Positions 1 to 36,500 of a stretch of 64,000 nt of DNA are shown piece by piece. The notes beneath the pieces were generated by a model. The model saw only the letters and a program-made list of their open reading frames with translations, was not told where the DNA came from and made no database searches. Numbering within the stretch: the stretch's first letter is position 1; every line of letters begins with the position of its first letter. Source of the DNA: Perna viridis (Eukaryota); contig CM074511.1 in assembly GCA_037379345.1 (NCBI GenBank), positions 58,534,862 to 58,598,861 on the forward strand, given 5' to 3'. Made by a program: the position numbers and the translations under genes.

Positions 1-129
1 AGGCTTATACCGAAAAAGAATCCGAGAATATTCGTTGGCGACAAATTGATTAGGTAATGGGAGGTATAAAGGTACCTAAAAATCACCATGAAGTTGATGA
101 GTGGGGATGCACGGTGGACCCTCTCATCC

Positions 130-16429: not shown

Positions 16430-16982
16430 TAATCAAAGGAACCAAGGTTATAGCGGTAATCAAAAGAATATAATCCAGGGACAAAGACCAAACATGGAAA
16501 ACAGACATACACAACAAAGAACATAAAGTAACTAAAATCATACATACAAAGTAACAAAAGCAAATGAGCAACTCGGACTCCACTAAAAACTGGGAGTATG
16601 GACCAGGTGCACCGGTAGGGTAAGCGTCCTCTGCTTTTCTAGAAACTCCCACCGAGTTCCTCATAAAAAGTCAAGTCCGGGGTAGACAAACGAGGAAAGG
16701 AAAACTGACCCGTTGAACAAATCAGTGTTCATGGTGCGGATGGATACACCATAACGATCCACGAGTTCATGATGACGACCGTAAAACTTCTGTAGTAATG
16801 ATTTCAATCTTGTAGCAACATATCCGTGTTCCAGAGGACTATTTGTTAGAAGTCTAGCGCGATACAAAAAGTCTGCGTAGATTCGGCAAGCTTTGGCATA
16901 ACGTATGAGTTGTGATATGAACACTCCATTCGCAGGTACTGAAGGGATGTTGCCACAGTTGAATGGAAAGATGACAATTCTG
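16430..16982 (-). mobile_element. Penelope-like (Naiad-type) retroelement, 5'-truncated: RT C-terminus plus 3' region
   Basis: GNIPSVPANGVFISQLIRYAKAC...KFYGRHHELVDRYGV; homologous to 35990-36500. Confidence 0.88.
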
Positions 16983-16999
16983 AATATTATGAAGAACAG

Positions 17000-17695
17000 C
17001 ATTTGAAATTTAATTAAATATGGTAGAAATCTGATTTTTTTTTTAAAAGCCGATTTTATGGGGGTGATTCCTTTGACCCCTTATGACTCAAAAACCATAA
17101 GAGATATCTGAATTCTGATTTTCGGAATCCAATTTAAAACAAATTTTTGAAATCAGACCAAAAATTAAAAAAAAAATGTAGATTGATAGGGTGTGGCCCT
17201 TTGATCCACTATAAGTCGAAAACCGTAAGAGATACTAATATCTGAAATCTGATTGAAAAACGAAGGCAGGGATTTTCATAAAGAATCTAATAAAACAATT
17301 AAAAATCGTACCTACAATAAAAAGTTTAATATTTGGAGCGTGGCCCAAAATACTCCAAAACAGTTTTGGATATTAAGCTTAACCTGCATTTTTTAAACAA
17401 AATTTCAAGAGGAACAGATTGAAATCTGAATCATGAAAATCGGATCAACAGCTTTTCCTGTCAATTTTTTAATAATAACAACCATTTTCCCCCTTACTTG
17501 CAAATAAGGTGGAGCAAAAACCTCCAAAAACAATAGATCCCACCACCATGTCCCTACAAAATATGTGTTAAAATTTCAAAAAAGATCGGATTATTTTTAC
17601 TCAAGTTATCATAAATAAACTAAAGTAGATAGATGCCAACGACAGGCTGATATCATTAAACGACTGAAAAATAATTTTTGCGGGCGTATAAAAGC
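17000..17695. mobile_element. Decayed non-autonomous Helitron/HINE-like repeat
   Basis: Degenerate internal subrepeats (GGGTGTGGCCC..TAAGAGATA) and a terminal hairpin followed by GCGGGCGTATAAAA. Family assigned from recall only. Confidence 0.4.
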
Positions 17696-18213
17696 TGGAA
17701 CCCTCTTTGATAAATTTCTGTATCGGAGCTCCTTTCATGATTTCTTTTAACTACTAAACAAACTCCTATACATTATACGTCCGTTGTTGTTTGAAGTACG
17801 AGGGTACCAGAGTCTAAGATTAAATACATTAAATACTTAGTACATTTATAACACTTGCCAAAAACGGGATCTTTTTTTTTGCCTTTGCCTCCATACCAGA
17901 TTAACTGACACAATAAGAACGCGTAATCATCCTTTTCTTTTCAAACATTCACTTTTGAGTACTATGGTTTATTTATAGACGGATATTTAAAGCGAAAAAA
18001 AACTAGAAAGCGAACTTCATTTCAAATTTTAAATAACAAGGGTAACATATACTGTATAAAATGAAGTCTCATTCAAAACGTTTACCAAAAATTTAAATGC
18101 ACGAGGAGTATATAATAATTAAATATTTCACCGGTAAAATGCCAAGTCTTTTACAGGATCATATTTATACATAAAGGGTGTATTTAAATAGGGAATAATT
18201 GTGTATAAACAGC

Positions 18214-18726
18214 TTAAGTAAACACATCCTCATAAGAACTAATTGTGGCCTGTGTATCATTACTGTCCTTTGATATCTCCCTCATCAGTGGCTCCTTCGT
18301 GCTTCCTGATGATATACTGAATCGAACTTTTTTGTACGATCCTTTTCCATTTATCACAGCATTATCCCAAGAAGAATCTGGTGTACATAAACTATCTCGA
18401 CCTTTCAAGTATAGGCTCGGGACAGTCGAGTTCGAAAAATTAGGATCGGACACAGAGGTCAATAGACTTCTCGTTCTATTCACATCACACTTGTGTTTAC
18501 CTAGCCACGATAAGTTATCTGACTTAAGGTATCGAGATATTGCGGTTTCTTCCTCCCTGTTGACTCGCCGTTTTTGGATATGTCCGGCTATAAACGCCAT
18601 TATCCCAAGTCCATAAACAACTACGGTGATAATAATGAAAGTAGCTGCGCCTGTAGCATCGTAGTTTCCATTAGACACATACTCTGTGCAGTTCACAAAA
18701 CTTAAATTAGAAGCAGAAACTTCCAT
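18214..18726 (-). CDS. 170-aa intronless single-pass membrane protein, KCNE/MinK-like paralog B
   Basis: ATG-to-stop ORF; no signal peptide; N-terminal sequons NLS and NCT; TM AATFIIITVVVYGLGIMAFIAG; basic IQKRR; EEETAISRYLK; aligns with the neighbouring ORF. Confidence 0.8.
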   Translation of the reverse strand: MEVSASNLSFVNCTEYVSNGNYDATGAATFIIITVVVYGLGIMAFIAGHIQKRRVNREEETAISRYLKSDNLSWLGKHKCDVNRTRSLLTSVSDPNFSNSTVPSLYLKGRDSLCTPDSSWDNAVINGKGSYKKVRFSISSGSTKEPLMREISKDSNDTQATISSYEDVFT

Positions 18727-18945
18727 TGTGTAACTGTTACATGTTGCTTCTAATTCACTTAATTTTTAAGAACACAAACAAACAGTAAATCAAGACACAC
18801 ATAAAACATTAGAAGTTACATATATAGACTTTCTTGATTTAAAACACAAACACACAAATATATTAGTATACGGTTTAAAATTTTATTTTATTTTAAAATC
18901 TTAATGCCGATAAACATAAACTATTTCGTATGTTTGGAACGGGAT

Positions 18946-19497
18946 TTAAATTTTGGTGGTTGACCCAAACGTTACTGATTTAATTGTAGCTGTAGATTTC
19001 TTTCTTGTAGATTCGCCTGGGAATGAGTATGGAGGGACAGGTGATAACGGGGATGTCGTTTCTGACGTCTCAGAGTAGTAAGACCGGAGAGACGTGTCCG
19101 ACTCCGCGCCTGATAAATCACTCTCAGTTAATCTGGCTTCTTCTGATTCTGAAATCCGTTGCATTCTTTTTTCTTCGTGTCTGAAAAGAATTGCCTTCAT
19201 CATATTTTTTCGGTGCTGCATCAATTTCTGTCTGTGTGCCTGTAAGTTTACCTTCTTTTCCATTTTGAGATATCGTCCCAGTTCTTCATCTTTGTTAGAT
19301 GTTTCTTTATGTTGACGTTTTATTCTAGCACAGAGCATCGAGCAGACACCCAGTAGAGAGTAAACAAGTACGGTAGTAACTATATACTGCATTGCTCCTT
19401 GTTGATCGTAGTCATCGGGGAATCCATCACAATTTTTATCTTTTCCCGTTACGTTACATGGCATCAATGTTGTTGTTATTGCTGTGACATTGGCCAT
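18946..19497 (-). CDS. 183-aa intronless single-pass membrane protein, KCNE/MinK-like paralog A
   Basis: First ATG at 19497 (MANVT..); sequon NVT twice; YDQQGA, TM MQYIVTTVLVYSLLGVCSMLCA, then RIKR and DEELGRYLK; Ser-rich tail. Confidence 0.82.
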   Translation of the reverse strand: MANVTAITTTLMPCNVTGKDKNCDGFPDDYDQQGAMQYIVTTVLVYSLLGVCSMLCARIKRQHKETSNKDEELGRYLKMEKKVNLQAHRQKLMQHRKNMMKAILFRHEEKRMQRISESEEARLTESDLSGAESDTSLRSYYSETSETTSPLSPVPPYSFPGESTRKKSTATIKSVTFGSTTKI

Positions 19498-22380
19498 TTC
19501 TTTCGTTCTTGTATATGAGCAGAAACTGGCAGAATTGTTTAAGTGTTTTAGTTTCAATGAAGTCAAATGAACTTAAATTTCATAACTTTTTTTGCATTCC
19601 TTAGTTAAATTGAGGTCGCATTTTTACACAAGGATCTTAAATTTCGAAGGCAATAGAATAAAACGTAAATCCAAAAATAGTTTCCGATGAACAATTCACA
19701 CACCAACAAATTAAACTTTCACTTCACTATGAATTATTCATGATTTGTTAGATACAGATTCCTTTACTACAAAACTGATGTAAATTTCATTCAAGCTAAA
19801 TTAATTGAATTAAAAACCCAGCTTATACTGAATTATCATAAGTCAGTTATATGAGTATTCCTTCAGAGATATCATCAAAACCTCAAAAGACCGTCATAGT
19901 CCATTATTTCTTTTGTTGTTTATAAATGATACTTGTACATGTATCTTGCCATTTAACACAATAATATAACAATTACATATCTCGCATGATTATCATGATC
20001 TCAAAACAAATTAAATTTAGTGGCATTACCTGCACGTTGATAGTTATGTGCATTTTTTGCTGACAAAAATGTTTTTGTTTTATTATCATAATACATGTAT
20101 GTCGACCAGTGATTGTTCTGAAATAAACGGTATCATATTCGCACCACAAAATTGAGAATTTGCAACATGAAGACTACAGGTATGACATCAATGGAGCCTA
20201 CGGTTCAAATTTCGATATTCAAGAAAAAATAGATAGAATGGAGAAAAGAGAATAAGAAACTAATACAAAGACACAGAAAACAATGATGAACAAAATCGGG
20301 AGACCGAAGCATGGCATTAAATTCCTAATTAATAAATACCTAGAGAAAACAAGAGAAAGTTACCTCCCTTGTGAGCGTCGTGAAAGTGTTAACTCACTAT
20401 CAACACTGGAGAAAGGTCTTACAACTTTATGTAATGTGCATTGTAGCTTTTGATCATTATTTCGTTCAACAAATTTATTTATTAGTTTCCTTCAATCTTA
20501 TTTGGGTCAGTTTACAAAATTTACTATTTACACCATATATATCAAGGCTTTCATTGAATATATCAGTAAATGTCAAGACCACCAACTTTGAATTGTTGAG
20601 ATAATGAGATGTTAAGACACTCGGTTTTCAAAATAATTACTATTAAACCCCAAATTATATTGTAATTATTTACAACCACTCTTTCTATGATGTCTATTTG
20701 CACATTATTCTGTCACCTCTCGCATATTCTTACTACGCTTTTTTTTTGCAGAGTTGAGTCACCACCGCGGAAGTTCCTACGTTAATCAAACTTGATATCT
20801 TTCTTTTTTTGTTGTTGTAGTCAGAAATTACATACTTTGTTTCTATTATTTGTGTTATGACCATTTACTGTAAATGTGTTGGAACAAATACAAATATTGA
20901 ATTTGAATATATAATAAAGTCTGAATACGACGACATCTTGGAGTAAAACTTTTAATATCGAACTGATCACTAGATAACGCTAAGGCAACTAGCAAAACGT
21001 ACTTTATAACATTCAAGATTGAAATATAAAAATACAATGATATGAAGAGATGTTAAAAATTATGTTGGAAAACCCTCTTACACATCATTAATCACATCTT
21101 TAACATTCAATTCAATGTAACAAAGAAAAAAAAAGAGAAACAACTGATCTAGAAGTTGTTATAGCAGGCATAATTGTTAAATAATGACTGTCAATGTAAC
21201 AGAAGTATAGACCGTAGAGCCTATCAATGCCACTAGATAAAACATGCTCAATTTTCGAGAATGGTTCAAGAATAAAAACATTACATTTTTGTCGTCGTTT
21301 TTTGTTTGTTTGTTAAAGCCAATGACAGATAAATAGATAGGTGTTAATCGATTTATAAATGACTTGCTTCTCTTTTGGGCTTGTAAGGGAGCAAAATATG
21401 TAACTTTCACGTAGGCGTCAGGCCCGCCAGTATCATGGTATCATAGTAAAAATAATGTCATGTAGTCTCCTCATGTTCAATGAAATGGTGGAATAAAATA
21501 TGATACTAGTAGTTATGACTGCCGAAAGGGGATTAATAATATCTGAAACGCCGGTAATGCCTAAGCCAAAGACGAGTGCATGGACTTTAAGATCAATCAA
21601 ATAGCATGTCACACTGTGCAACACCATACTGACTGATGACATTGGCCAGGCAGAAAAAAATACTACTGAATAATGCATTCCAAGTGATTTCCTATAATCC
21701 AGTGCGATTACTGAAATCAGAATTGATACGATCTAATATAATACACTTGTACTTTCGTTTGATGGAAAAGGACCTTTATTGATTTTTTTTGTACAGATAA
21801 CTTAAGTAATATAGAGTGTTAAAAGAGGAAGCGACACAACTACAAATAAAAACAAGACACAAGAAATATAAAGCAGCATAAAACGACCGACGCATATCAT
21901 ATCTGTTCACTTGTGGCAAATGTGGGTACAATATTAGTTTTTGAACTTTCTCCATGGAACTGCAGTTCCATAACTAGTTTGGACACAATATATTGAAAAA
22001 AAATTAAATTAAAAAAAGTAAAAGCAGTTCTGCTTTAAAGGTGCTTATCAAAGACATTTGCTTTCGATTTCTAAGTAGAAATAAAAAAAGATTTTAAAAT
22101 ATTAAATATCTATTATAAGTATATTATAAGTATATTTCCTATATTAATTTATTATTGAATAAAATTTAATTTTCAGCATTCTGTTTGATCTTTATGAGTT
22201 ATTATGAGCACGACGTCTTACGTACCCCCCACCCCCCCCCCATTTTTATCAGCAACATAATAACAAATCAATAGAAATTGGAATATTATCAATGGAAATA
22301 ATAACACTTTGTGATGCTTATCCATATGTCTTAAGCAAGAACTTTGATATTCCAACTACAGAATTAAGATTCGGTCCTTA

Positions 22381-25300
22381 TTAATCTACGGTATCGTCAA
22401 TATCGTCAATCGGTTCTACATCCTTGTTAGTGTCATCGTCATCACTGTTTTGTTTATCCTTCCGCGTGCTTTCCTCCATTCTGTCGGAACTACTGGCATA
22501 GTTCTCGTCTAGACTAAAAACTTTTTCTTCAGACCCAACATGAGAAAATTTACTATTTCTTTCAGACACTTCCAGTTTCACCCCCTCAAACTTCACCTGA
22601 CTTTCCTCCGTCTCTTGATTTACGGGATTGACTTCGGTAATGATACCTTCATACTTGTCTTCAGTGATACCTACCATGGAGTCATGTGATTCTGGTAGTG
22701 GACTTTCATTATCGGCACATGTAACGTCTGAACTGGAAAATGCCACCACCTCATCAACGTGTTTTGCCGTCGTTAATGGGCTAGCTTCTTTACCGAGGAT
22801 AGGAGATCTTCTGTTTTCTGAAATACTAGCAGCACCATTACTTTTTATTGGCTTCAAAACATCTTCGTCGTCCGATTCAACAAGTCCGAAGGGGATTGAT
22901 TCGTCTGAGGAATCATCAGTGTTGTCAACATTTGTCAGCGTGCTCCTTCCTTTCGAGACACTTTTCTGCTTTTCTGTTTCAATGTGATGTTTTGATGAGA
23001 TTGTTTCTGACGCTTTTATCATCGATTTAGAAACCGACGGTAGAATTTTTACCTCATCATCGCCGTCATGGTCCGCTGCTTTCGTTTCACAAATGTTTAT
23101 TGATTCTTTTTCATCCCTGGACTTGTTATCGTCCCTTTCCCTCTCAAAAACTGCGTCATGACCACTGTTTTCGCCAATAAGAACTAGATTCTTAGCACTG
23201 TGTCCAAACTTCTCGCAACCATTAAGGTATCGATCACGTGCTGCTACCTGTGTAGAAATCTGGTCAACATCAAGAAGAGACCGCAAAACAACGATTGTAG
23301 AGCAAGTACTGTCTGCCTCGTTGCTGACTAGACGGATTTCTTTCAGATGTTTCATGCTGTCTGGAGTCATGACGTATAGCAAGAGAGCGTCGTAAAAGGC
23401 TTGTACACATACATCCAGGGGGAAACCCACTCCACCTGGAATTTAAAATTTCACGCAAGTACACCAGATATGCAACGAAAATAATCACTTAATTTTTTAT
23501 GGTAAGTTTATATAACAGTTTGAAATTTTCTGAAATCTATTTTTATGACATTTAGAACAATTCAGAAAAATCAAATTGAAAGCAACTTAATCAGTGATGA
23601 GTAAATAATGATGTCTGTTCTCCTAAATAGCAATTAGGGCGGTTATAAAATCTAAAATACTTTCACAGTGTCATACAACATAAGGAAGCAACTGTCACAG
23701 TGTAATCACCTCCTGTATTAATGCAGTAAACTGATCAATATCTATATGTACATGTACATACTTAAAACTTTCAACAAGCACTGACATTTGAACTACAAGG
23801 GAGTTTAAGGTAGCATAGATTGAAATTGAAGAGAAACAACTGGTAAGCAGTTCTCCTTGTCTATTTTCACAATCACTTACCATTTTAAAATGCTTTTCAA
23901 AAACTCAGAACTACAAGAAGGAGAAATCGTGTGTAATTGTCTGTTTGATTTCTTAGCTTTACTCAAGGGCTATTTAAAGTAGTCGTACTTGATAGAAATC
24001 GGCCAAATGAAGACTAAACAGAAAAATCATGATATACTGTAAGACCTATATGTGCTGCGTACATGTACACAAAAATGTTATAGCTCTATTAGTTCGAATG
24101 GGCAGAAACAAAAACGACTCCATGGACAAATAAACTCATGGAAATTGTAGTTATCATATATACTTACTTAATATGAAGCATTTTCTGTTATTTTGAATTC
24201 ATATGATAGCGATCAAAGACTAATGGACCCATATCCATTTTAATACGTAATATATATCAGTGATACTCAGTCATCATTGAAACATTAATGGGTAAAAAAC
24301 AAAACATACATTATTATCGACCGTTTTCATTCACGAGTTAACTTGTCAACACACAACAAAAATGTCCTAAAAATTGCATTTTAAAGCATTTTCAAGAAGT
24401 ATACCAACATGTACAGAGTGACATATTACAGAATAATAATTAAAAAATGTAACCATTATATATTGTGTAATACTAGTACATTTAAGTAAACCTCTAGATT
24501 ATATTATCAGCTACAAACCTATCAAGATATATTTGCTTGAATAAGATCAGTATAGTAGGTAATCAAAGTTGAATCCGAACTGTGATGCGTGAAACCGTTC
24601 TATGCGTTAGATTAAGGTAAGAAATTCGAACTGTGATGCGTGAAACCGTTTTATGCGTTAGATTAAGGTAAGAAATGTACTTTAGTCATGTGTGTCAATT
24701 TCAAGACACATAAATGATGAACTTTCGGTCTACATGCTCAAGAGTTTAAACTTTAGTAAAGAGCCGTTAATTTTTAATATTTTCTCGGATCTTTCTGCTT
24801 GAACAGTTTTTTTTAACTGTCACATGATGAGGTCTCAAGGTCGGAAACTGTAGAAAAAAGTAAGAATCCAACAGTTACATAATGGTTCATGAGCATGAAT
24901 TGGTACATGGATAGTATTTCTTATGTTAGGTTTATTTCAAAATCTTACCAGTTCCTATAAGTGGCATGGCAATACTTTTAAGCCACATAAGACTGTTGGC
25001 ATACTGGAAAACATTGACGTATGTACACGTCAGTAGATGTGTTGATTCATCTTTGTTATCCTCCCGCCATAATGGGCCTACTGCATGGATGACGAAACCA
25101 ACTTTCTTGTCTAAACCTCCACCAGCGCTTGTATGAATAACCTCCCCCAAATTTAGTTGCCCGTGCTGTTCAATATACTCCTTGCATTCTGTCTTAAGTT
25201 TTTGATCGGCAAGATTGGCAATAATTCTTGAGAGGCCGTAATTATGTGACAATTTGGATGTAGCAGATGTGACAATGGCGTCGGTTTTCTCTTTCAAGAT

Positions 25301-28300
25301 ATCGTTCATGAGGACAGATATAGCAAGAGTAGAGATGTTAAAGTCGAATGTCAAAGGTACATCTTTGAAGTCGTTGTGAGACAGGGAAAACCCGCTCTGT
25401 GGTGGCCTTTTTGGCATATTTCGAAGCCAAGCAGGGGCGCTGCCTAATCCTGTACCGCACATTCCTAAACCTCCAAGCAGATCATCTGCATCCCCAAAAC
25501 TCAATGCATTATGGTCAAAACCTGCAGGTTCTGCATCGCGCCATCGTTCATACGAATACTGTTGGAATTGATCAGCCTCCCTTGATTCAGTATGATACGG
25601 ATATTGCAGTGGGTTCAGGATTTCATTTAGTGTTCCCCCACTTGCTTCAAGACTACGGTCTTCTTCAGTATTGAAGACCCGTTCTTGACTCTCTTCTCTG
25701 TTCAGAAGAATCGGTTTCACTTCACCGCCTTGACTGCATACGTCATCTAAATATTGCCACGCCCACTCGATTTGGTACCAGTCACCTGAAATCGTATAAT
25801 TGTCTTCGGAGGTGACATCCAACTCTCCATCGTACTGAATGTCGTCGAGATATTTTGGATCATTGTCCAGTAGTTCAGTCATTGTTGGACACAACTCAAC
25901 TGTCACTTTACTAAAAACCTGCAAAATAGGTATCCGTGAATTTTTTAATATCATAGTTAATTCTGAACTCGAAACAATATGTTCAATATAAAGTATTCTG
26001 GCAAGCACAAAATGACATGAAAAATGCATCAGAAACAAATTTTGAAGATAATATACTATTAGACAAAATACAGAAATTATAAAGTAATAAATTGCTTCGC
26101 GGAGTGCAGGTAGTCATGCCCGCAGAGGTCAAACCCTGATTCGATAGTGATCTAATATCTAAAAAAAAAAAAAAATATGCAAAAAAAGATTCTGAAATTA
26201 CTAAGAAAAAAACAAAACAAATAACAAAGTTGCATGAACAATGCTTGGAACGTTTTGAAGTTATAAGATGTATGAAGCAATTATCGGAAAACCCTCTTTT
26301 TTGTAAATAACGTAAAAAAAACCCAAAAAAAACAAAAAAAACAAAAAAAAACTCGTAAACGGAAAAAAATCATCACAATTAAAGGGGAGCTAATATCGAT
26401 AGTAATAAACTAATTTCAAAAGTTTCATGAAAACGGATGCAACCACTACTGAGTTATAGTCCGAAACTGCGAAATCCCCTCCTTTTTTTTTAACAAACTC
26501 AAGCCTCATAACTGTAAATCGTAAAATTGGAAATTTATTAAGGGAGCTAAAAATCAATGTAGATAAACAATGCCCCAAAGTTTCATTGACATTGCTGTAA
26601 GGTGATTGAGTTGATGAAGTAGTCCGAAAACATAAACTACCTCCTTTTTGACGAATTAAGTCCCATTACGAAAACTGAAAAAAACGAAATTCAAAACAAA
26701 TCGAACTCTTCAATAAAAAAAAACAATTCAACTTAGTTTCACAAGCAAGAAATCTGTGAGTGATGGCTAACTAGTGATGCCTCCGCTTTCAATCACGATA
26801 TCAAGCACATTACCAAAATTCTCGGTAAAAAGGAAGTTGTTGTGGATCTTTCTGAAAATTAATCACATATGACATACCTGCAGAATATGTTAAAATTTTA
26901 AGCCGCTGTGATGAGTAGTTGCTGAGAAAACTGTGACGGAAAAAAACTGTTACGGTAACACGGAAAGGGTAAAACAGTAGACCCCTTATTCTTCGAAGCA
27001 GGATATAAAAATGGTGCCAGCATTTTAGTAATAGTGCGACGACTGAACGACGAATGGACACCGGTATACTATAATACGTCAGACAGACAGACGCATACAA
27101 ATAAAAAAAGTGTCACGGAGCTCAACTTGATGCGACCGAAGCGTGTTGAATTCTGTTCAATTGAAACAAGTGTGGACACAATTATAGTTTTTGACACACT
27201 TAAGCATAGGGACTTACAATGTACAGTTCATTATGGACACAAAAACTGGTTTGTACACAATATAACACTAAGTGCAAATCAAAGATCTTTGCCTTCAATC
27301 CCAGTAATTAAAAAACAGAAGAGATGTAAATCTGATTGGCAAACGATGACTTAAAATTTCCAAAAGACTGGACAAGTTTTACTTAAATCATCGTTAATAA
27401 AAGTTAACGGGCGTCACCCGCAACGACGACGACGCCAGGGTCATACAACCGGAAACAGTTTCGTATAAAATTACTATAAAAGATTTTTTGAGTATTTGAA
27501 TACATGTACCATGCATCAATACTAAACGGTTTCTTCAAATCTTACGGTAAAAAATAAAACAAGGCCGTGGCTATTGGACTTCAGAAACGGGGCCGCACAA
27601 GGGGAAAGAAAGCGTGGATCTGCACTGTCCTTTCATAAATAAATGTTCATGATGAAGTGTTTGATCAATGTCCAATATATTTGTACAGTCAATATGGGAA
27701 CGTCAACTTTTTTTCAGTGCTTAATTAACTTTAATAAAAATTGGTGACATCCAGTTTCTCTCACTTCCTGTGTGTCTCTCCTAATTCTATTAACATTGAG
27801 TGCTCAGCATATAACTGCTGTTAAATAGACCTGTAAAACTCCCCTAAAGTTTGGGTTAAAAACAATTATAATTCATGTAATATTTGTTAATTGTATATTG
27901 TTAATACATGTAAATGTAAACTTTCTAGGAATTTGACAGTAAGGGGTTAGTCCCAATTTTTTGTGTTGCAGTACTTTTGTGTTACAGAACATGTACGTAG
28001 TTAACATTCTATTCCATGGTATATAGCTATAGGAATCGGGTATAGGGACATTGTGTTGTATAGCTATAGGAATCGGGTATAGGGACATTGTGTTGTATAG
28101 CTATAGGAATCGGGTATAGGGACATTGTGTTGTATAGCTATAGGAATCGGGTATAGGGACATTGTGTTGTATAGCTATAGGAATCGGGTATAGGGACATT
28201 GTGTTGTATAGCTATAGGAATCGGGTATAGGGACATTGTGTTGATTGTAAATATAAATAAAAATCATATTTGCAAATTAAAGAAGATCTGCCTAATTTCC

Positions 28301-34600: not shown

Positions 34601-35504
34601 TGAGCTATTTGAAATAAATGCAAGGACATCGTCTGCAATTTTGTTCAGTGGTTGCTGTTCTACATGTGTAGGTCATTTCAGAAAGGCTGATTTTTTTAAA
34701 TTGCTTTCTTTTAAAGCGAAAATCTTATTCTTAAACTTTCACATTTTCCTGGGTTTTCAATTAAAACCTGACAGTCGGTGAGAAGTAGGAAAGGAATTCA
34801 TACGAACTTCATGTACATATAAACAAATTTTATATTTCAATCATTCCTGCTATTAGGACCACGAAAATTCACTTTTCTTCACTATACAATAAAATGTATA
34901 GATATTTTAATTATTGGTTTTAAGAAGCTTTGGATAGATATAGGCAATATTGTTTAAAAAAAAATTAAAATAAATAAAATAATAATTTAGCTCGATCGCG
35001 ATTCTCGTAGAAATTTCTGGAATGCGTGTAAATGAAAATCAGACCGAGTTAAGTATATATCTATAATAGTTTGTTCCCTCCAATCTGTCTGGCTAAATAG
35101 ATACAGTTAGGTCACGTGAGTAAGGCAAGCTACCTAATGAATGGTACGTAAATTGGTGGACATTATATTACTAACAATATCAAATGAAAATACGAAATCC
35201 AGCTATTGGATAAGTAAAATAATCTGGAGTGGAAGCGTAACAGGTATGCTTATCCACTTCTTTGTCAAATTTTTACACTTAATACAAATATAGTACATGT
35301 ATCATGTACGCCTAAAAAATAGATTTTTGCAAATAAACATGAATATTTTTATGCATGTAAATATTTCTTATCAAGAAAGAAACTTACGTCTGTTTTCACC
35401 ACATAAAAAATTAGAACTTCCCCTATCACCACATGTACTATACCAGGGTAAAAGTATTGGCGCGTCGAATGATTCGAACGGAGACGTACATTCAAATCAT
35501 CATT

Positions 35505-36500
35505 TCAGTAGTATAGTTCTTGGTAGAGATTACTTCGTGAAAAATAATTCCAAATCATCTTCCAAATATACAGAAGATCTTTACAAAATGCTGGAATTTT
35601 TAAACGACAACATATTTGTCCAGTGTAGTGAACGCGTTTTTCAACAAACGGTCGGCATTCCAATGGGAACAAATTGTGCTCCTCTACTTGCTGACCTATT
35701 CCTTCACTCTTATGAAGCTGACTTTATAGCCGATTTGATCCGTAAGAAAGAATCCTTTAATCTCAGTTTTCGCTATATAGATAACGTATTATCTTTACAT
35801 CTAAACAATCCTAATTTCGGGGATTTGATACATTGCATCTATACCAAAGAACTTGAGATGAAGGATACTACAGACACTGTTAGGTCACCCTCATATCTTG
35901 ACCTACACTTAGAAATCGATGTTAAAGGAAAACTATTGACCAAAATTTACGACAAACGTGATGACTTTTCATTCACTTTCCTTTCATCTGTGGCAACATC
36001 CCTTCAGCACCTGAGTATGGAGTGTTCATATCACAACTCGTACGTTATGCCAGAGTTTGCCGAAACTACGCAGACTTTTTGTATCAAGCTAGACTTCTAG
36101 GCCTCTAGAACAGGAATTTGCTGCTACAGAATACAGAAGTTTTATGGTTGCCAACATGAACTCGTGTATCGCTACGGTGTATTCATATGCGCCATGAAAA
36201 CTGATTTGTTTAACGTGTCATAGTTTTCCTTTCCTCTTTCGTCTACCCCGGACATGACTTTTCAGAACAACTCGGCGGGTATTTCTAGAAAAGCAGAGGA
36301 TGCTTACCCTACCGGTGCGCCTGGTCCATGCTCCCAGGTTTTAGTGGAGTCTGACTTGCTCATTTGCTTTTGTTTCTTTGTATGTATGATATTAGTTACT
36401 TTATGTTCTTTGTTGTGTATGTCTGTTTTTCATGTTGGTCTTTGTCCCTGGATTACATTCTTTTGATTACCGCTATAACCTTGGTTCCCTTGATCACTCT
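35505..36500 (+). mobile_element. Penelope-like (Naiad-type) retroelement, decayed RT plus 3' region
   Basis: FQQTVGIPMGTNCAPLLADLFL, RYIDNV (YxDD degraded), SYLDLHLEI, TKIYDKRDDF; frameshift near 35970; short internal deletions. Confidence 0.92.

What the first reader, a model, noticed from the sequence alone, without database searches (positions are those of the whole stretch)
18214..19497. Tandem pair of intronless KCNE/MinK-like single-pass membrane proteins in a mollusc-like genome
Seen: two adjacent ORFs, too diverged to recognise as DNA repeats, share one architecture. Each has no signal peptide, a short Cys-containing N-terminus with two N-glycosylation sequons, and the pattern YDxxGA-x2-(Y/F)I-x2-TV-x-VY(S/G)L..G, a basic patch, then E..(L/I)xRYLK. 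Known: vertebrate KCNE beta-subunits have single-exon CDSs, occur in tandem (KCNE1/2), are N-glycosylated without a cleaved signal peptide, and show YIL.V..F(Y)G..GIM..Y.RSK+ followed by a juxtamembrane Tyr. The best-known invertebrate counterparts are the nematode MPS proteins. Inference: this may be an unannotated lophotrochozoan family of K+ channel (or GPCR) accessory subunits.
Basis: partly seen in the sequence, partly recalled or inferred. Interest (0 to 1): 0.75.

Follow-up and report, generated by a model that had tools for sequence, protein, structure and literature searches.

The report
Tandem KCNE-like single-pass membrane protein genes
Two neighbouring single-exon genes in a mussel-like genome encode small glycosylated one-helix membrane proteins of a large, unnamed invertebrate family that looks like a distant cousin of the KCNE helper subunits of potassium channels, which are so far thought to be essentially vertebrate.

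Summary
Two minus-strand ORFs (18214-18726, 170 aa; 18946-19497, 183 aa) share a 70-residue core (31% identity, E 4e-9) with the stated motifs. Both are real, conserved genes: full-length orthologues exist, including Mytilus "uncharacterized" proteins.

They belong to a large family with no Pfam model: 286 representative clusters at E<=1e-3, with named members from bivalves, gastropods and a flatworm. Members have a sequon-rich N-terminus without a signal peptide, a near-invariant YDxxGA motif, a very conserved TM helix, a basic patch and a Y-L-K motif.

The KCNE reading is partly supported.
- Against: neither protein hits Pfam ISK_Channel; only 3 of 148 members give a weak hit at E<=10. No solved KCNE chain is matched.
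- For: the family profile finds, at genome-wide E 5e-11, a gene 0.7 Mb away that passes Pfam's ISK_Channel cut-off. hhalign to that gene's mollusc/annelid family gives 98% probability, E 2e-13, against at most 27.8 score for shuffled controls. A protein language model puts both proteins nearest a KCNE4 cluster.

A channel-accessory role is inferred, not shown. The two genes are old paralogues, not a recent duplication.

The parts
18214..18726 (-). Gene A: single-exon CDS, 170 aa plus stop ('A subfamily')
   Evidence: ORF. Four full-length orthologues of 173-176 aa at 46-52% identity, and P0045 at 1.6e-34.
18946..19497 (-). Gene B: single-exon CDS, 183 aa plus stop ('B subfamily')
   Evidence: ORF. 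Six orthologues at 59-71% identity starting at the same Met. The Mytilus gene models are 177 aa.
18652..18726 (-). Gene A predicted extracellular N-terminus (residues 1-25): two sequons (N7, N12), C13, no signal peptide
   Evidence: Sequence. N12 and C13 are invariant in A2. Family statistics.
19399..19497 (-). Gene B predicted extracellular N-terminus (residues 1-33): two sequons (N3, N15), acidic DGFPDDYD stretch
   Evidence: N15, T17, G25, F26, P27 are invariant in A1..
18646..18663 (-). Gene A YDxxGA motif at the outer end of the helix
   Evidence: In the family, D is at 0.99, G at 1.00 and A at 0.99 frequency.
19393..19410 (-). Gene B YDxxGA motif
18580..18651 (-). Gene A transmembrane helix (residues 26-49)
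   Evidence: The only hydrophobic 19-mer windows are here. G26-K52 is almost invariant in A2.
19327..19398 (-). Gene B transmembrane helix (residues 34-57), the start of a predicted continuous helix 32-126
   Evidence: pLDDT above 90 over about residues 31-125; mean 2.51 bits per column, the most conserved segment.
18523..18534 (-). Gene A juxtamembrane RYLK motif
   Evidence: in the family, Y 0.77, L 0.70, K 0.62.
19264..19275 (-). Gene B juxtamembrane RYLK motif
18319..18333 (-). Gene A KKVRF, an RVxF-type (PP1-docking-like) motif in the cytoplasmic tail
   Evidence: K133-V-R-F-S137 is invariant in 5 of 5. [RK]KVRF is present in 6 of 6 A-subfamily members.
18967..18981 (-). Gene B KSVTF, an RVxF-like motif near the C-terminus
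   Evidence: Present in 3 of 6 B-subfamily members; the other three have KSMRI.
18727..18945 (.). 219-bp spacer between the stop of B and the start codon of A

Best explanation
The two ORFs are real, separately conserved, single-exon genes for small type-III membrane proteins: N-terminus outside, no cleaved signal peptide, one TM helix. They belong to two old subfamilies of a large spiralian family that has no Pfam model. The family signature is a short N-glycosylated acidic ectodomain ending in Y-D-x-x-G-A, an unusually conserved TM helix (..YIV.TV.VY.LGI...I..), a basic stop-transfer patch, an acidic cluster, a Y-L-K motif on a long cytoplasmic helix, and a disordered Ser/Thr-rich tail.

The family is most likely a divergent branch of the KCNE / ISK_Channel superfamily. 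It is a sister expansion to a mollusc-annelid family that Pfam already scores as ISK_Channel.

Inferred mechanism: the conserved helix packs against the transmembrane domain of a pore-forming partner, most plausibly a voltage-gated K+ channel such as KCNQ, which this genome encodes. The juxtamembrane helix and tail would then tune gating or trafficking and recruit regulators. The RVxF-type motif suggests protein phosphatase 1; the T-x-[IVM] C-terminus in subfamily B suggests PDZ scaffolds.

Shown: gene reality, family membership, predicted topology features, and homology to the ISK_Channel-positive spiralian family. Inferred: homology to vertebrate KCNE, the channel partner, PP1/PDZ binding and expression.
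For: Genes and family. Full-length orthologues exist for both genes. There are 286 representative clusters at E<=1e-3 and 49 at E<=1e-10. The own genome has nine uninterrupted ORF loci, 7 of them on contig C1.

Topology. 150 of 155 members have at least one N-terminal sequon and 110 have at least two. Sequon density is 4.59 per 100 aa in the N-terminus against 0.81 in the C-terminal part. Only 4 of 155 have a hydrophobic N-terminal 15-mer. Charge is acidic before and basic after the helix. There is a single hydrophobic segment, and AF2 predicts one helix 32-126 at pLDDT above 90.

The TM helix is the most conserved part: 2.51 bits per column against 0.69-1.33 elsewhere. That fits a specific intramembrane contact rather than a mere anchor.

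Link to ISK_Channel.
- Pfam PF02060 finds a gene 0.68 Mb away on the same contig (L007): 27.3 bits in the genome search and 26.3 bits by hmmscan, E 6.7e-6, model positions 1-113 of 126, cut-off 22.1. A second gene (L008) scores 20.9 bits.
- 12 of 19 L007-family members hit ISK_Channel at E<=1, best 6.9e-7.
- The family profile A4 finds the L007 ORF at genome-wide E 5.3e-11, 51.2 bits.
- hhalign of A3 against the L007 family gives 95.2% probability, E 2.5e-8. The 156-sequence core gives 98.0%, E 2.1e-13, score 67.0. Controls: reversed template 17.4; 100 block-shuffles mean 17.0, maximum 27.8.
- The core HMM scores 25 of 25 ISK-like proteins at 24.5-40.4 bits, against at most 2.9 bits for reversed sequences.
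- phmmer of L007 and L008 against all PDB sequences ranks KCNE2/KCNE1 first, though at E 0.43-0.9.
- The ESM Atlas nearest cluster for both window proteins is a KCNE4 cluster in which 93% of members carry ISK_Channel: scores 0.92 and 0.94, with 199 and 211 of 256 features shared.

Possible partners. The Pfam KCNQ_channel domain is present at 3 places in the genome.
Against: Neither window protein hits ISK_Channel at E<=10, nor do the four further paralogues tested, L003-L006. Of 148 family members, 0 hit at E<=0.01. Only 3 hit at E<=10, fewer than the noise families PFF1_TM (9) and V-ATPase_su_f (8).

Profiles A3, A4, A5 and A6, and both single proteins, find no KCNE chain in the PDB at E<=10.

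The similarity to the L007 family sits almost wholly in the TM helix: with only the flanks shuffled the score stays at 58.8 of 67. Convergence of a packing motif is therefore not excluded.

The L007-to-Pfam step is borderline. Only 2 of 24 L007 homologues carry a precomputed PF02060 hit. The same family also gives sub-threshold hits to the unrelated single-pass family EVI2A in 11 of 19 members, best E 2.8e-4.

Atlas scores of 0.9 or more occur for 4-10% of shuffled proteins by the tool's own calibration.
Confidence: 0.5

Rival explanations
1. An independent spiralian family of single-pass glycoproteins, together with the L007 family, that is not homologous to vertebrate KCNE. On this reading the ISK_Channel score of L007 and the language-model proximity reflect convergent architecture: short glycosylated N-terminus, one helix, basic patch, juxtamembrane Tyr. 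The proteins would serve as accessory or scaffold subunits of some other membrane complex (GPCR, transporter, ligand-gated channel), or as membrane-anchored PP1-targeting subunits.
For: There is no direct HMMER link to ISK_Channel or to solved KCNE chains. The L007 link to Pfam is borderline and is accompanied by EVI2A noise hits. The inter-family similarity is confined to the TM helix. An RVxF-type motif is conserved in 6 of 6 A-subfamily tails, and is present in 32 of 134 family tails against 12.4 +/- 3.3 for shuffled tails.
Against: L007 aligns to nearly the whole Pfam model (positions 1-113 of 126) above the curated cut-off. KCNE2/KCNE1 are the top-ranked PDB sequences out of 177,635 for both L007 and L008. 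The KCNE4 cluster is the nearest Atlas cluster for both window proteins, with 199-211 shared features; the tool says this range is typical of the same family.
Confidence: 0.38
2. FXYD-like regulators of the Na,K-ATPase. The Y-D just before a Gly-containing helix recalls the FXYD signature (motif recalled from memory, not taken from a call).
For: Only the superficial resemblance of [F..]YD..G before a single helix in a small type-I-like protein.
Against: There is no FXYD-family (ATP1G1_PLM_MAT8) hit for the two proteins at E<=10. It is not among the 25 families most often hit by the 148 members at E<=10. No FXYD chain appears among the PDB hits of profiles A3 or A4 at E<=10. The Atlas neighbours do not include it.
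Confidence: 0.03
3. Chance ORFs, pseudogenes or fragments of a larger spliced gene.
For: Expression was not verified. An antisense ORF of 123 aa overlaps gene A.
Against: Orthologues align from the first Met to the last residue, and their length differences keep the reading frame. Independent gene models of the same length exist in three Mytilus species. 155 of 156 family members start with Met and have a short N-terminus. All nine loci in this genome are open, uninterrupted frames. Fourteen small contig sets that the tool guesses to be RNA, from five studies, hold 65-79% of the stretch (a guess only).
Confidence: 0.02

Closest known systems
Vertebrate KCNE1-5 (MinK/MiRP), Pfam ISK_Channel PF02060
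   Same: Small size, a single TM helix, N-out topology without a signal peptide, N-terminal sequons, a basic patch after the helix followed by a conserved Tyr-containing juxtamembrane motif, a single-exon CDS and neighbouring paralogues. There is a transitive sequence link through the L007 family, and both proteins sit nearest a KCNE4 cluster in the Atlas.
   Different: There is no direct match to the Pfam model or to solved KCNE chains. The near-invariant YDxxGA cap and the VY.LGI helix motif are the family's own. The cytoplasmic helix is much longer (predicted 32-126). No function has been tested.
Spiralian 'L007' family (Mytilus, Haliotis, Capitella uncharacterized proteins), partly recognised by Pfam as ISK_Channel
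   Same: The same genome and the same contig, 0.68 Mb away. An intronless ORF with N-terminal sequons. A very similar helix (ALLYIV.TLLFYSLGI..GI.SYLKREK against GAM.YIV.TVLVYSLLG). Mutual HMM and hhalign recognition.
   Different: L007 lacks YDxxGA (it has xxHALLY), and its juxtamembrane segment EMEEDR.YD.F differs. Similarity outside the helix adds only about 8 of 67 hhalign score units.
C. elegans MPS-1..4 (KCNE-like / MiRP-related subunits of KVS-1)
   Same: Invertebrate single-pass proteins described as KCNE-like (abstract start of PMC4210162 in the listing; passages of 10.64898/2026.04.28.721385). An Atlas neighbour cluster of gene B is nematode, but its identity was not checked.
   Different: No MPS sequence was available to compare here, so the relationship is untested.
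RVxF-type PP1-interacting proteins
   Same: [RK]KVRF is invariant in the A-subfamily tail, and KSVTF is present in gene B.
   Different: This is a short linear motif only. It is lost in 3 of 6 B-subfamily members and absent from the four further paralogues examined in this genome, L003-L006. Binding is untested.

Membership tests
KCNE / Pfam ISK_Channel (PF02060) | Score above Pfam's gathering cut-off (22.1 bits) on the ISK_Channel model | tested here: not met
   No hit at E<=10 for either window protein. 0 of 148 family members hit at E<=0.01 and 3 of 148 at E<=10, best 0.028. The six-frame genome search with PF02060 did not return the window genes.
KCNE / Pfam ISK_Channel (PF02060) | Sequence similarity to experimentally solved KCNE chains | tested here: not met
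   Profiles A3, A4 and A6 and both single proteins find no KCNE chain at E<=10.
KCNE / Pfam ISK_Channel (PF02060) | Profile-level homology to proteins that are themselves ISK_Channel members | tested here: met
   A4 finds the ISK_Channel-positive L007 ORF at E 5.3e-11. hhalign gives 98.0% probability, E 2.1e-13, against a shuffle maximum of 27.8 for an observed score of 67. The core HMM scores 25 of 25 proteins at 24.5-40.4 bits. L007 itself scores 26.3 bits, above the 22.1 cut-off. That last step is borderline.
KCNE / Pfam ISK_Channel (PF02060) | Single-pass, N-out topology with a glycosylated N-terminus and no cleaved signal peptide | tested here: met
   Prediction from sequence only: one hydrophobic segment, sequons concentrated N-terminally, and an acidic-outside/basic-inside charge pattern. 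AF2 predicts a single helix. Glycosylation itself is not testable here.
KCNE / Pfam ISK_Channel (PF02060) | Coding sequence in one exon | tested here: met
   The ORFs are uninterrupted and equal in length to the orthologous proteins. Introns in the UTRs were not examined.
KCNE / Pfam ISK_Channel (PF02060) | Assembles with and modulates a voltage-gated K+ channel | not testable with these tools
   Only the presence of KCNQ_channel-domain loci in the genome was shown.
Unnamed spiralian YDxxGA single-pass family (no Pfam model) | YDxxGA cap, conserved helix with an invariant Tyr, basic patch and Y-L-K motif; significant match to the family profile | tested here: met
   (P0008 2.8e-50, P0006 4.0e-81).
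FXYD (ATP1G1_PLM_MAT8) | Pfam or PDB sequence match to FXYD proteins | tested here: not met
PP1-docking (RVxF) proteins | [RK]-x(0,1)-[VI]-{P}-[FW] in a disordered region, conserved among orthologues | tested here: inconclusive
   A subfamily 6 of 6; B subfamily 3 of 6; whole family 32 of 134 against 12.4 +/- 3.3 in shuffled tails (related sequences, so not independent events). Binding is not testable here.

The most novel reading that the evidence does not exclude
KCNE-type channel subunits are not a vertebrate invention. Spiralians would carry a large, Pfam-invisible radiation of them: at least 286 clusters at 50% identity, and nine loci in this genome, seven on one chromosome-scale contig. 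The window's pair would be an anciently linked, possibly co-transcribed A/B couple (219-bp spacer) whose tails bring PP1 and PDZ scaffolds to the channel. This would be a built-in version of the phosphatase recruitment that vertebrate KCNQ1-KCNE1 achieves through a separate anchoring protein (that vertebrate fact is recalled, not checked here).
Probability: 0.3. Interest if true: 0.8.

Novelty: new variant of a known kind. Interest (0 to 1): 0.58.

Why it matters
A 2026 preprint on lamprey KCNE0 says that comparative genomics has not found canonical KCNE genes in invertebrates. It also says that the nematode MPS proteins are only 'sometimes described' as KCNE-like (passages). Ciona is reported to lack KCNE altogether (passages of PMC3206303).

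If this family is truly KCNE-related, the origin of KCNE-type modulation moves back to the bilaterian ancestor. Molluscan neurobiology (Aplysia, Lymnaea, oyster, mussel) would gain a whole set of candidate channel subunits that current annotation calls 'hypothetical'.

Even if the family is not KCNE-related, it is large and strongly conserved, its most conserved part is the membrane helix, and it has no family model. It deserves a Pfam/InterPro entry and a search for its membrane partner.

Tried and rejected
Direct tests of KCNE membership all came back negative.
- Pfam at E<=10 on the two proteins, on the four paralogues L003-L006, and on 148 family members.
- PDB profile searches with A3, A4, A5 and A6.
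- Single-protein PDB searches with the two window proteins.
- A combined superfamily profile (A6) did not pull in KCNE chains. It only hit low-complexity and coiled-coil noise.

FXYD was considered because of the YD-G motif and rejected. The V-ATPase subunit e/f hits (E 1.2-2.5, 8 of 148) are short TM-only noise.

The JGI name 'K+-sensing histidine kinase KdpD' for the P0007 cluster has no support: no Pfam domain was found.

The UniRef name 'Ion_trans_2 domain-containing protein' for the Macrostomum member P0166 could not be reproduced. P0166 has no Pfam hit at E<=10. I keep it only as a lead.

I did not run fold search. The AF2 model is one long helix plus disorder, and fold matches to that would be meaningless.

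dN/dS and synteny at the DNA level were not done.

I could not obtain vertebrate KCNE or nematode MPS sequences from any tool, so no direct profile-profile test against them was possible. No sequence from memory was used.

They found only one relevant item: a 2016 pipeline paper that automatically classed 8 Schistosoma japonicum and 4 S. haematobium sequences as 'Isk/KCNE' (one passage of PMC4794918). The held library lacks most subscription journals, so absence from print is not proven.
Full report
WHAT IS THERE

On the minus strand of the window lie two uninterrupted ORFs. Gene A is 18214..18726 (170 aa). Gene B is 18946..19497 (183 aa from its ATG; the frame is open up to a TTG at 19566). 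They are separated by 219 bp. The window has no N and is AT-rich, at 28-39% GC.

BLASTP of A against B aligns 70 residues at 31% identity and 56% positives, E 4e-9. Each N-terminus has two sequons and cysteine, and no hydrophobic leader.

ARE THEY GENES?

Yes. Gene B has six homologues of 150-181 aa at 59-71% identity. They align from the first Met almost to the last residue, with a mean column identity of 74%. Gene A has four homologues of 173-176 aa at 46-52% identity.

The nearest named B orthologues are 177-aa 'uncharacterized' proteins of Mytilus edulis (CAG2189358.1), M. galloprovincialis (VDI71662.1, VDI67639.1) and M. coruscus (CAC5396010.1). The window therefore comes from a bivalve related to mussels.

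In another species' assemblies, A-type and B-type proteins sit on contigs of identical lengths (426,347, 83,569 and 2,585 nt). This indicates that the tandem arrangement is conserved.

The two genes are nevertheless not each other's closest kin. Among 162 family proteins, B ranks 84th of A's 154 hits, and A ranks 121st of B's 159 hits. The pair is therefore an old linkage of two subfamilies, not a recent duplication.

THE FAMILY

A joint profile of both subfamilies (A3) was scored against 1.84 billion representative proteins. It finds 286 clusters at E<=1e-3, 49 at E<=1e-10 and 5 at E<=1e-30.

Few representatives carry names. Of the 20 looked up, three clusters carry a source name: Biomphalaria pfeifferi/glabrata, Patella caerulea and the flatworm Macrostomum lignano. 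The family is at least spiralian; its wider range is unknown.

In this genome the narrow profile finds six loci and the broad profile (A4) finds nine. All are open, uninterrupted frames of 138-260 aa, and seven lie on contig C1.

Family statistics, from the 155 members with the core motif and an initial Met:
- The N-terminal segment has a median length of 41 aa.
- 150 of 155 have at least one N-x-S/T there, and 110 have at least two.
- Sequon density is 4.59 per 100 aa N-terminally against 0.81 C-terminally.
- Only 4 of 155 have a signal-peptide-like hydrophobic 15-mer.
- Net charge is acidic just before the helix and basic just after it.

This pattern is that of an N-out, C-in single-pass protein inserted without a cleaved leader.

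The most conserved part is the membrane helix itself: 2.51 bits per column, against 1.19 before it, 1.33 in the juxtamembrane part and 0.69 further on. D, G, A and one Tyr are at frequencies of 0.96-1.00. The members were picked with a motif regex that 156 of 162 matched, so the bias from that selection is small.

AlphaFold2 with the 148-row alignment predicts one continuous helix for gene B, residues 32-126, at pLDDT above 90. Both ends are disordered. A single-pass protein whose helix is its most conserved element is what one expects of a subunit that packs against another membrane protein.

IS IT KCNE?

Direct tests fail.
- Neither protein hits Pfam ISK_Channel at E<=10. The four paralogues tested, L003-L006, do not either.
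- Of 148 members, none hits at E<=0.01. Three hit at E<=10, which is below the noise families.
- No profile or single-protein search finds a solved KCNE chain at E<=10.

By Pfam's criterion these proteins are not ISK_Channel members.

Indirect evidence is nevertheless substantial.

(i) PF02060 searched against this genome finds an intronless 243-aa ORF 0.68 Mb from the window (L007). It scores 27.3 bits in the genome search and 26.3 bits by hmmscan, E 6.7e-6, aligned to model positions 1-113 of 126, above the 22.1 cut-off. A second ORF (L008) scores 20.9 bits. L007 has homologues in Mytilus, Haliotis and the annelid Capitella. 12 of 19 of them hit ISK_Channel at E<=1, best 6.9e-7.

(ii) The broad family profile A4 finds the L007 ORF in the 723-Mb genome at E 5.3e-11, 51.2 bits. 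hhalign of A3 against the L007 family gives 95.2% probability, E 2.5e-8. My 156-sequence core alignment gives 98.0%, E 2.1e-13, score 67.0 over 64 columns. The controls are as follows:
- Reversed template: 17.4.
- 100 block-wise column shuffles: mean 17.0, s.d. 3.8, maximum 27.8; 0 of 100 reach 67.
- Helix columns only shuffled: the score falls to a mean of 19.5.
- Flanks only shuffled: the score stays at a mean of 58.8.

The signal is therefore the residue order of the helix. HMMs recognise each other's families: 25 of 25 ISK-like proteins score 24.5-40.4 bits, and gene B and gene A score 23.0 and 19.7 bits. Reversed sequences score at most 6.7 bits.

(iii) phmmer of L007 and L008 against 177,635 PDB sequences ranks KCNE2 first for L007. 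It ranks KCNE2 and then KCNE1 first to fourth for L008. The alignments run through the helix and the juxtamembrane segment, but the E-values are only 0.43-0.9.

(iv) The ESM Atlas feature search puts both window proteins nearest a 'KCNE4' cluster in which 93% of members carry ISK_Channel. Scores are 0.92 and 0.94, with 199 and 211 of 256 features shared. A molluscan cluster with 25% ISK_Channel members follows. By the tool's own calibration such scores are leads, not proof.

Weak points:
- Only 2 of 24 L007 homologues carry a precomputed PF02060 hit.
- The same family gives sub-threshold EVI2A hits in 11 of 19 members.
- The similarity between the two spiralian families is essentially confined to the helix.

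My reading is as follows. Homology between the window's family and the L007 family is well supported. Homology of both to vertebrate KCNE is more likely than not, but unproven.

MECHANISM (INFERRED)

The proteins would act as KCNE-like subunits. The conserved helix, capped by YDxxGA at the outer leaflet, would lodge against the transmembrane domain of a pore-forming channel. The genome has three loci with the KCNQ_channel domain. The long cytoplasmic helix and tail would then influence gating, trafficking or regulation.

The A subfamily keeps an invariant [RK]KVRF in 6 of 6 members and a DDVFT-type C-terminus. Gene B has KSVTF, kept in 3 of 6 members, and a T-x-[IVM] end. RVxF-type motifs occur in 32 of 134 family tails, against 12.4 +/- 3.3 in shuffled tails. 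Kinship inflates this figure.

I had seen it independently and tested it. PP1 and PDZ recruitment are hypotheses only.

EXPRESSION

The look-up of sequencing runs listed 20 holders. Fourteen are small contig sets (59-105 million letters, five studies) that the tool guesses to be RNA. They hold 65-79% of the sampled words of 17600-20000. Three large sets hold 77-100%.

The two CDSs make up only 44% of that stretch. If the small sets are transcriptomes, they must therefore include UTR or spacer sequence. With a 219-bp spacer this raises the possibility of co-transcription.

Expression, transcript ends and the dicistronic idea therefore remain unchecked, and I looked for this place in no other read or contig collection.

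LITERATURE

- A 2026 preprint on lamprey KCNE0 states that canonical KCNE genes have not been identified in invertebrates, and that the nematode mps genes are only sometimes described as KCNE-like (passages).
- Nakajo et al. 2011 state that Ciona has no KCNE-like gene (passages).
- PMC4210162 calls MPS-1 highly homologous to KCNE (abstract start in the listing).
- A 2016 flatworm ion-channel pipeline classed 8 S. japonicum and 4 S. haematobium sequences as Isk/KCNE (one passage; supplements closed).
- I found no paper describing a molluscan or spiralian KCNE-like family (searches). The library is incomplete.

VERDICT

The genes are real members of a large, unnamed spiralian single-pass family. 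The KCNE-like interpretation is partly supported through a significant link to Pfam-recognised spiralian ISK_Channel-like proteins, but it fails direct membership tests. Function is inferred.

The finding is a new variant of a known kind if the KCNE link holds. If it does not, it is a sizeable uncharacterised family worth a family model either way.

Noticed in passing
G000:C1:59276140-59276703 (locus L007:1144-1872, minus strand), 0.68 Mb from the window: An intronless 243-aa ORF that passes Pfam ISK_Channel (26.3-27.3 bits against a cut-off of 22.1). It has homologues in Mytilus, Haliotis and Capitella, and many of them end in a VTNV-type C-terminus. It is a candidate spiralian KCNE proper. 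L008 (C1:39659393-39659587) scores 20.9 bits.
   Followed up: partly
own genome, contig C1: Seven of the nine loci hit by the family profile lie on contig C1, at about 10.34, 57.12, 58.55 (two loci), 59.28, 61.21 and 72.49 Mb. The others are on C14 and C3. This is a loose chromosomal clustering of the family.
   Followed up: no
window 18727-18945: Only 219 bp separate the stop codon of gene B from the start codon of gene A. Proteins identical to A and to B are each recorded on one contig of 2,975 nt. The mRNA may be dicistronic.
   Followed up: no
window 24932-26038 (-): A 368-aa open frame containing a Macro domain (PF01661, E 2.1e-18). The acidic 349-aa frame at 22381-23430 (-) has no Pfam hit. 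Both are probably exons of a neighbouring gene.
   Followed up: partly
window 16661-17002 (-) and 35297-36100 (+); also the flank of L003: Fragments of a repeated element. The same C-terminal module (...FISQLIRYAKACR.YADFLYRAR.LTN...GRHHELVDRY) lies next to gene A and next to the paralogue L003. The 267-aa ORF at 35297 looks like a reverse-transcriptase fragment but has no Pfam hit at E<=1e-3.
   Followed up: no
protein P0166 (Macrostomum lignano, UniRef100_A0A1I8HTW7): This family member is named 'Ion_trans_2 domain-containing protein' by UniRef, yet its 285 residues have no Pfam hit at E<=10. If the name comes from a longer fused model, it could hint at adjacency to a K+ channel gene. This is unverified.
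   Followed up: partly
protein cluster P0007 (JGI metagenome records): B-subfamily orthologues in metagenome data carry the automatic name 'K+-sensing histidine kinase KdpD'. No domain supports this name. It looks like animal host contigs mis-annotated in metagenomes.
   Followed up: partly
window 18245-18616 (+): A 123-aa antisense ORF overlaps gene A. It has no support; conservation is on the minus-strand frame.
   Followed up: no
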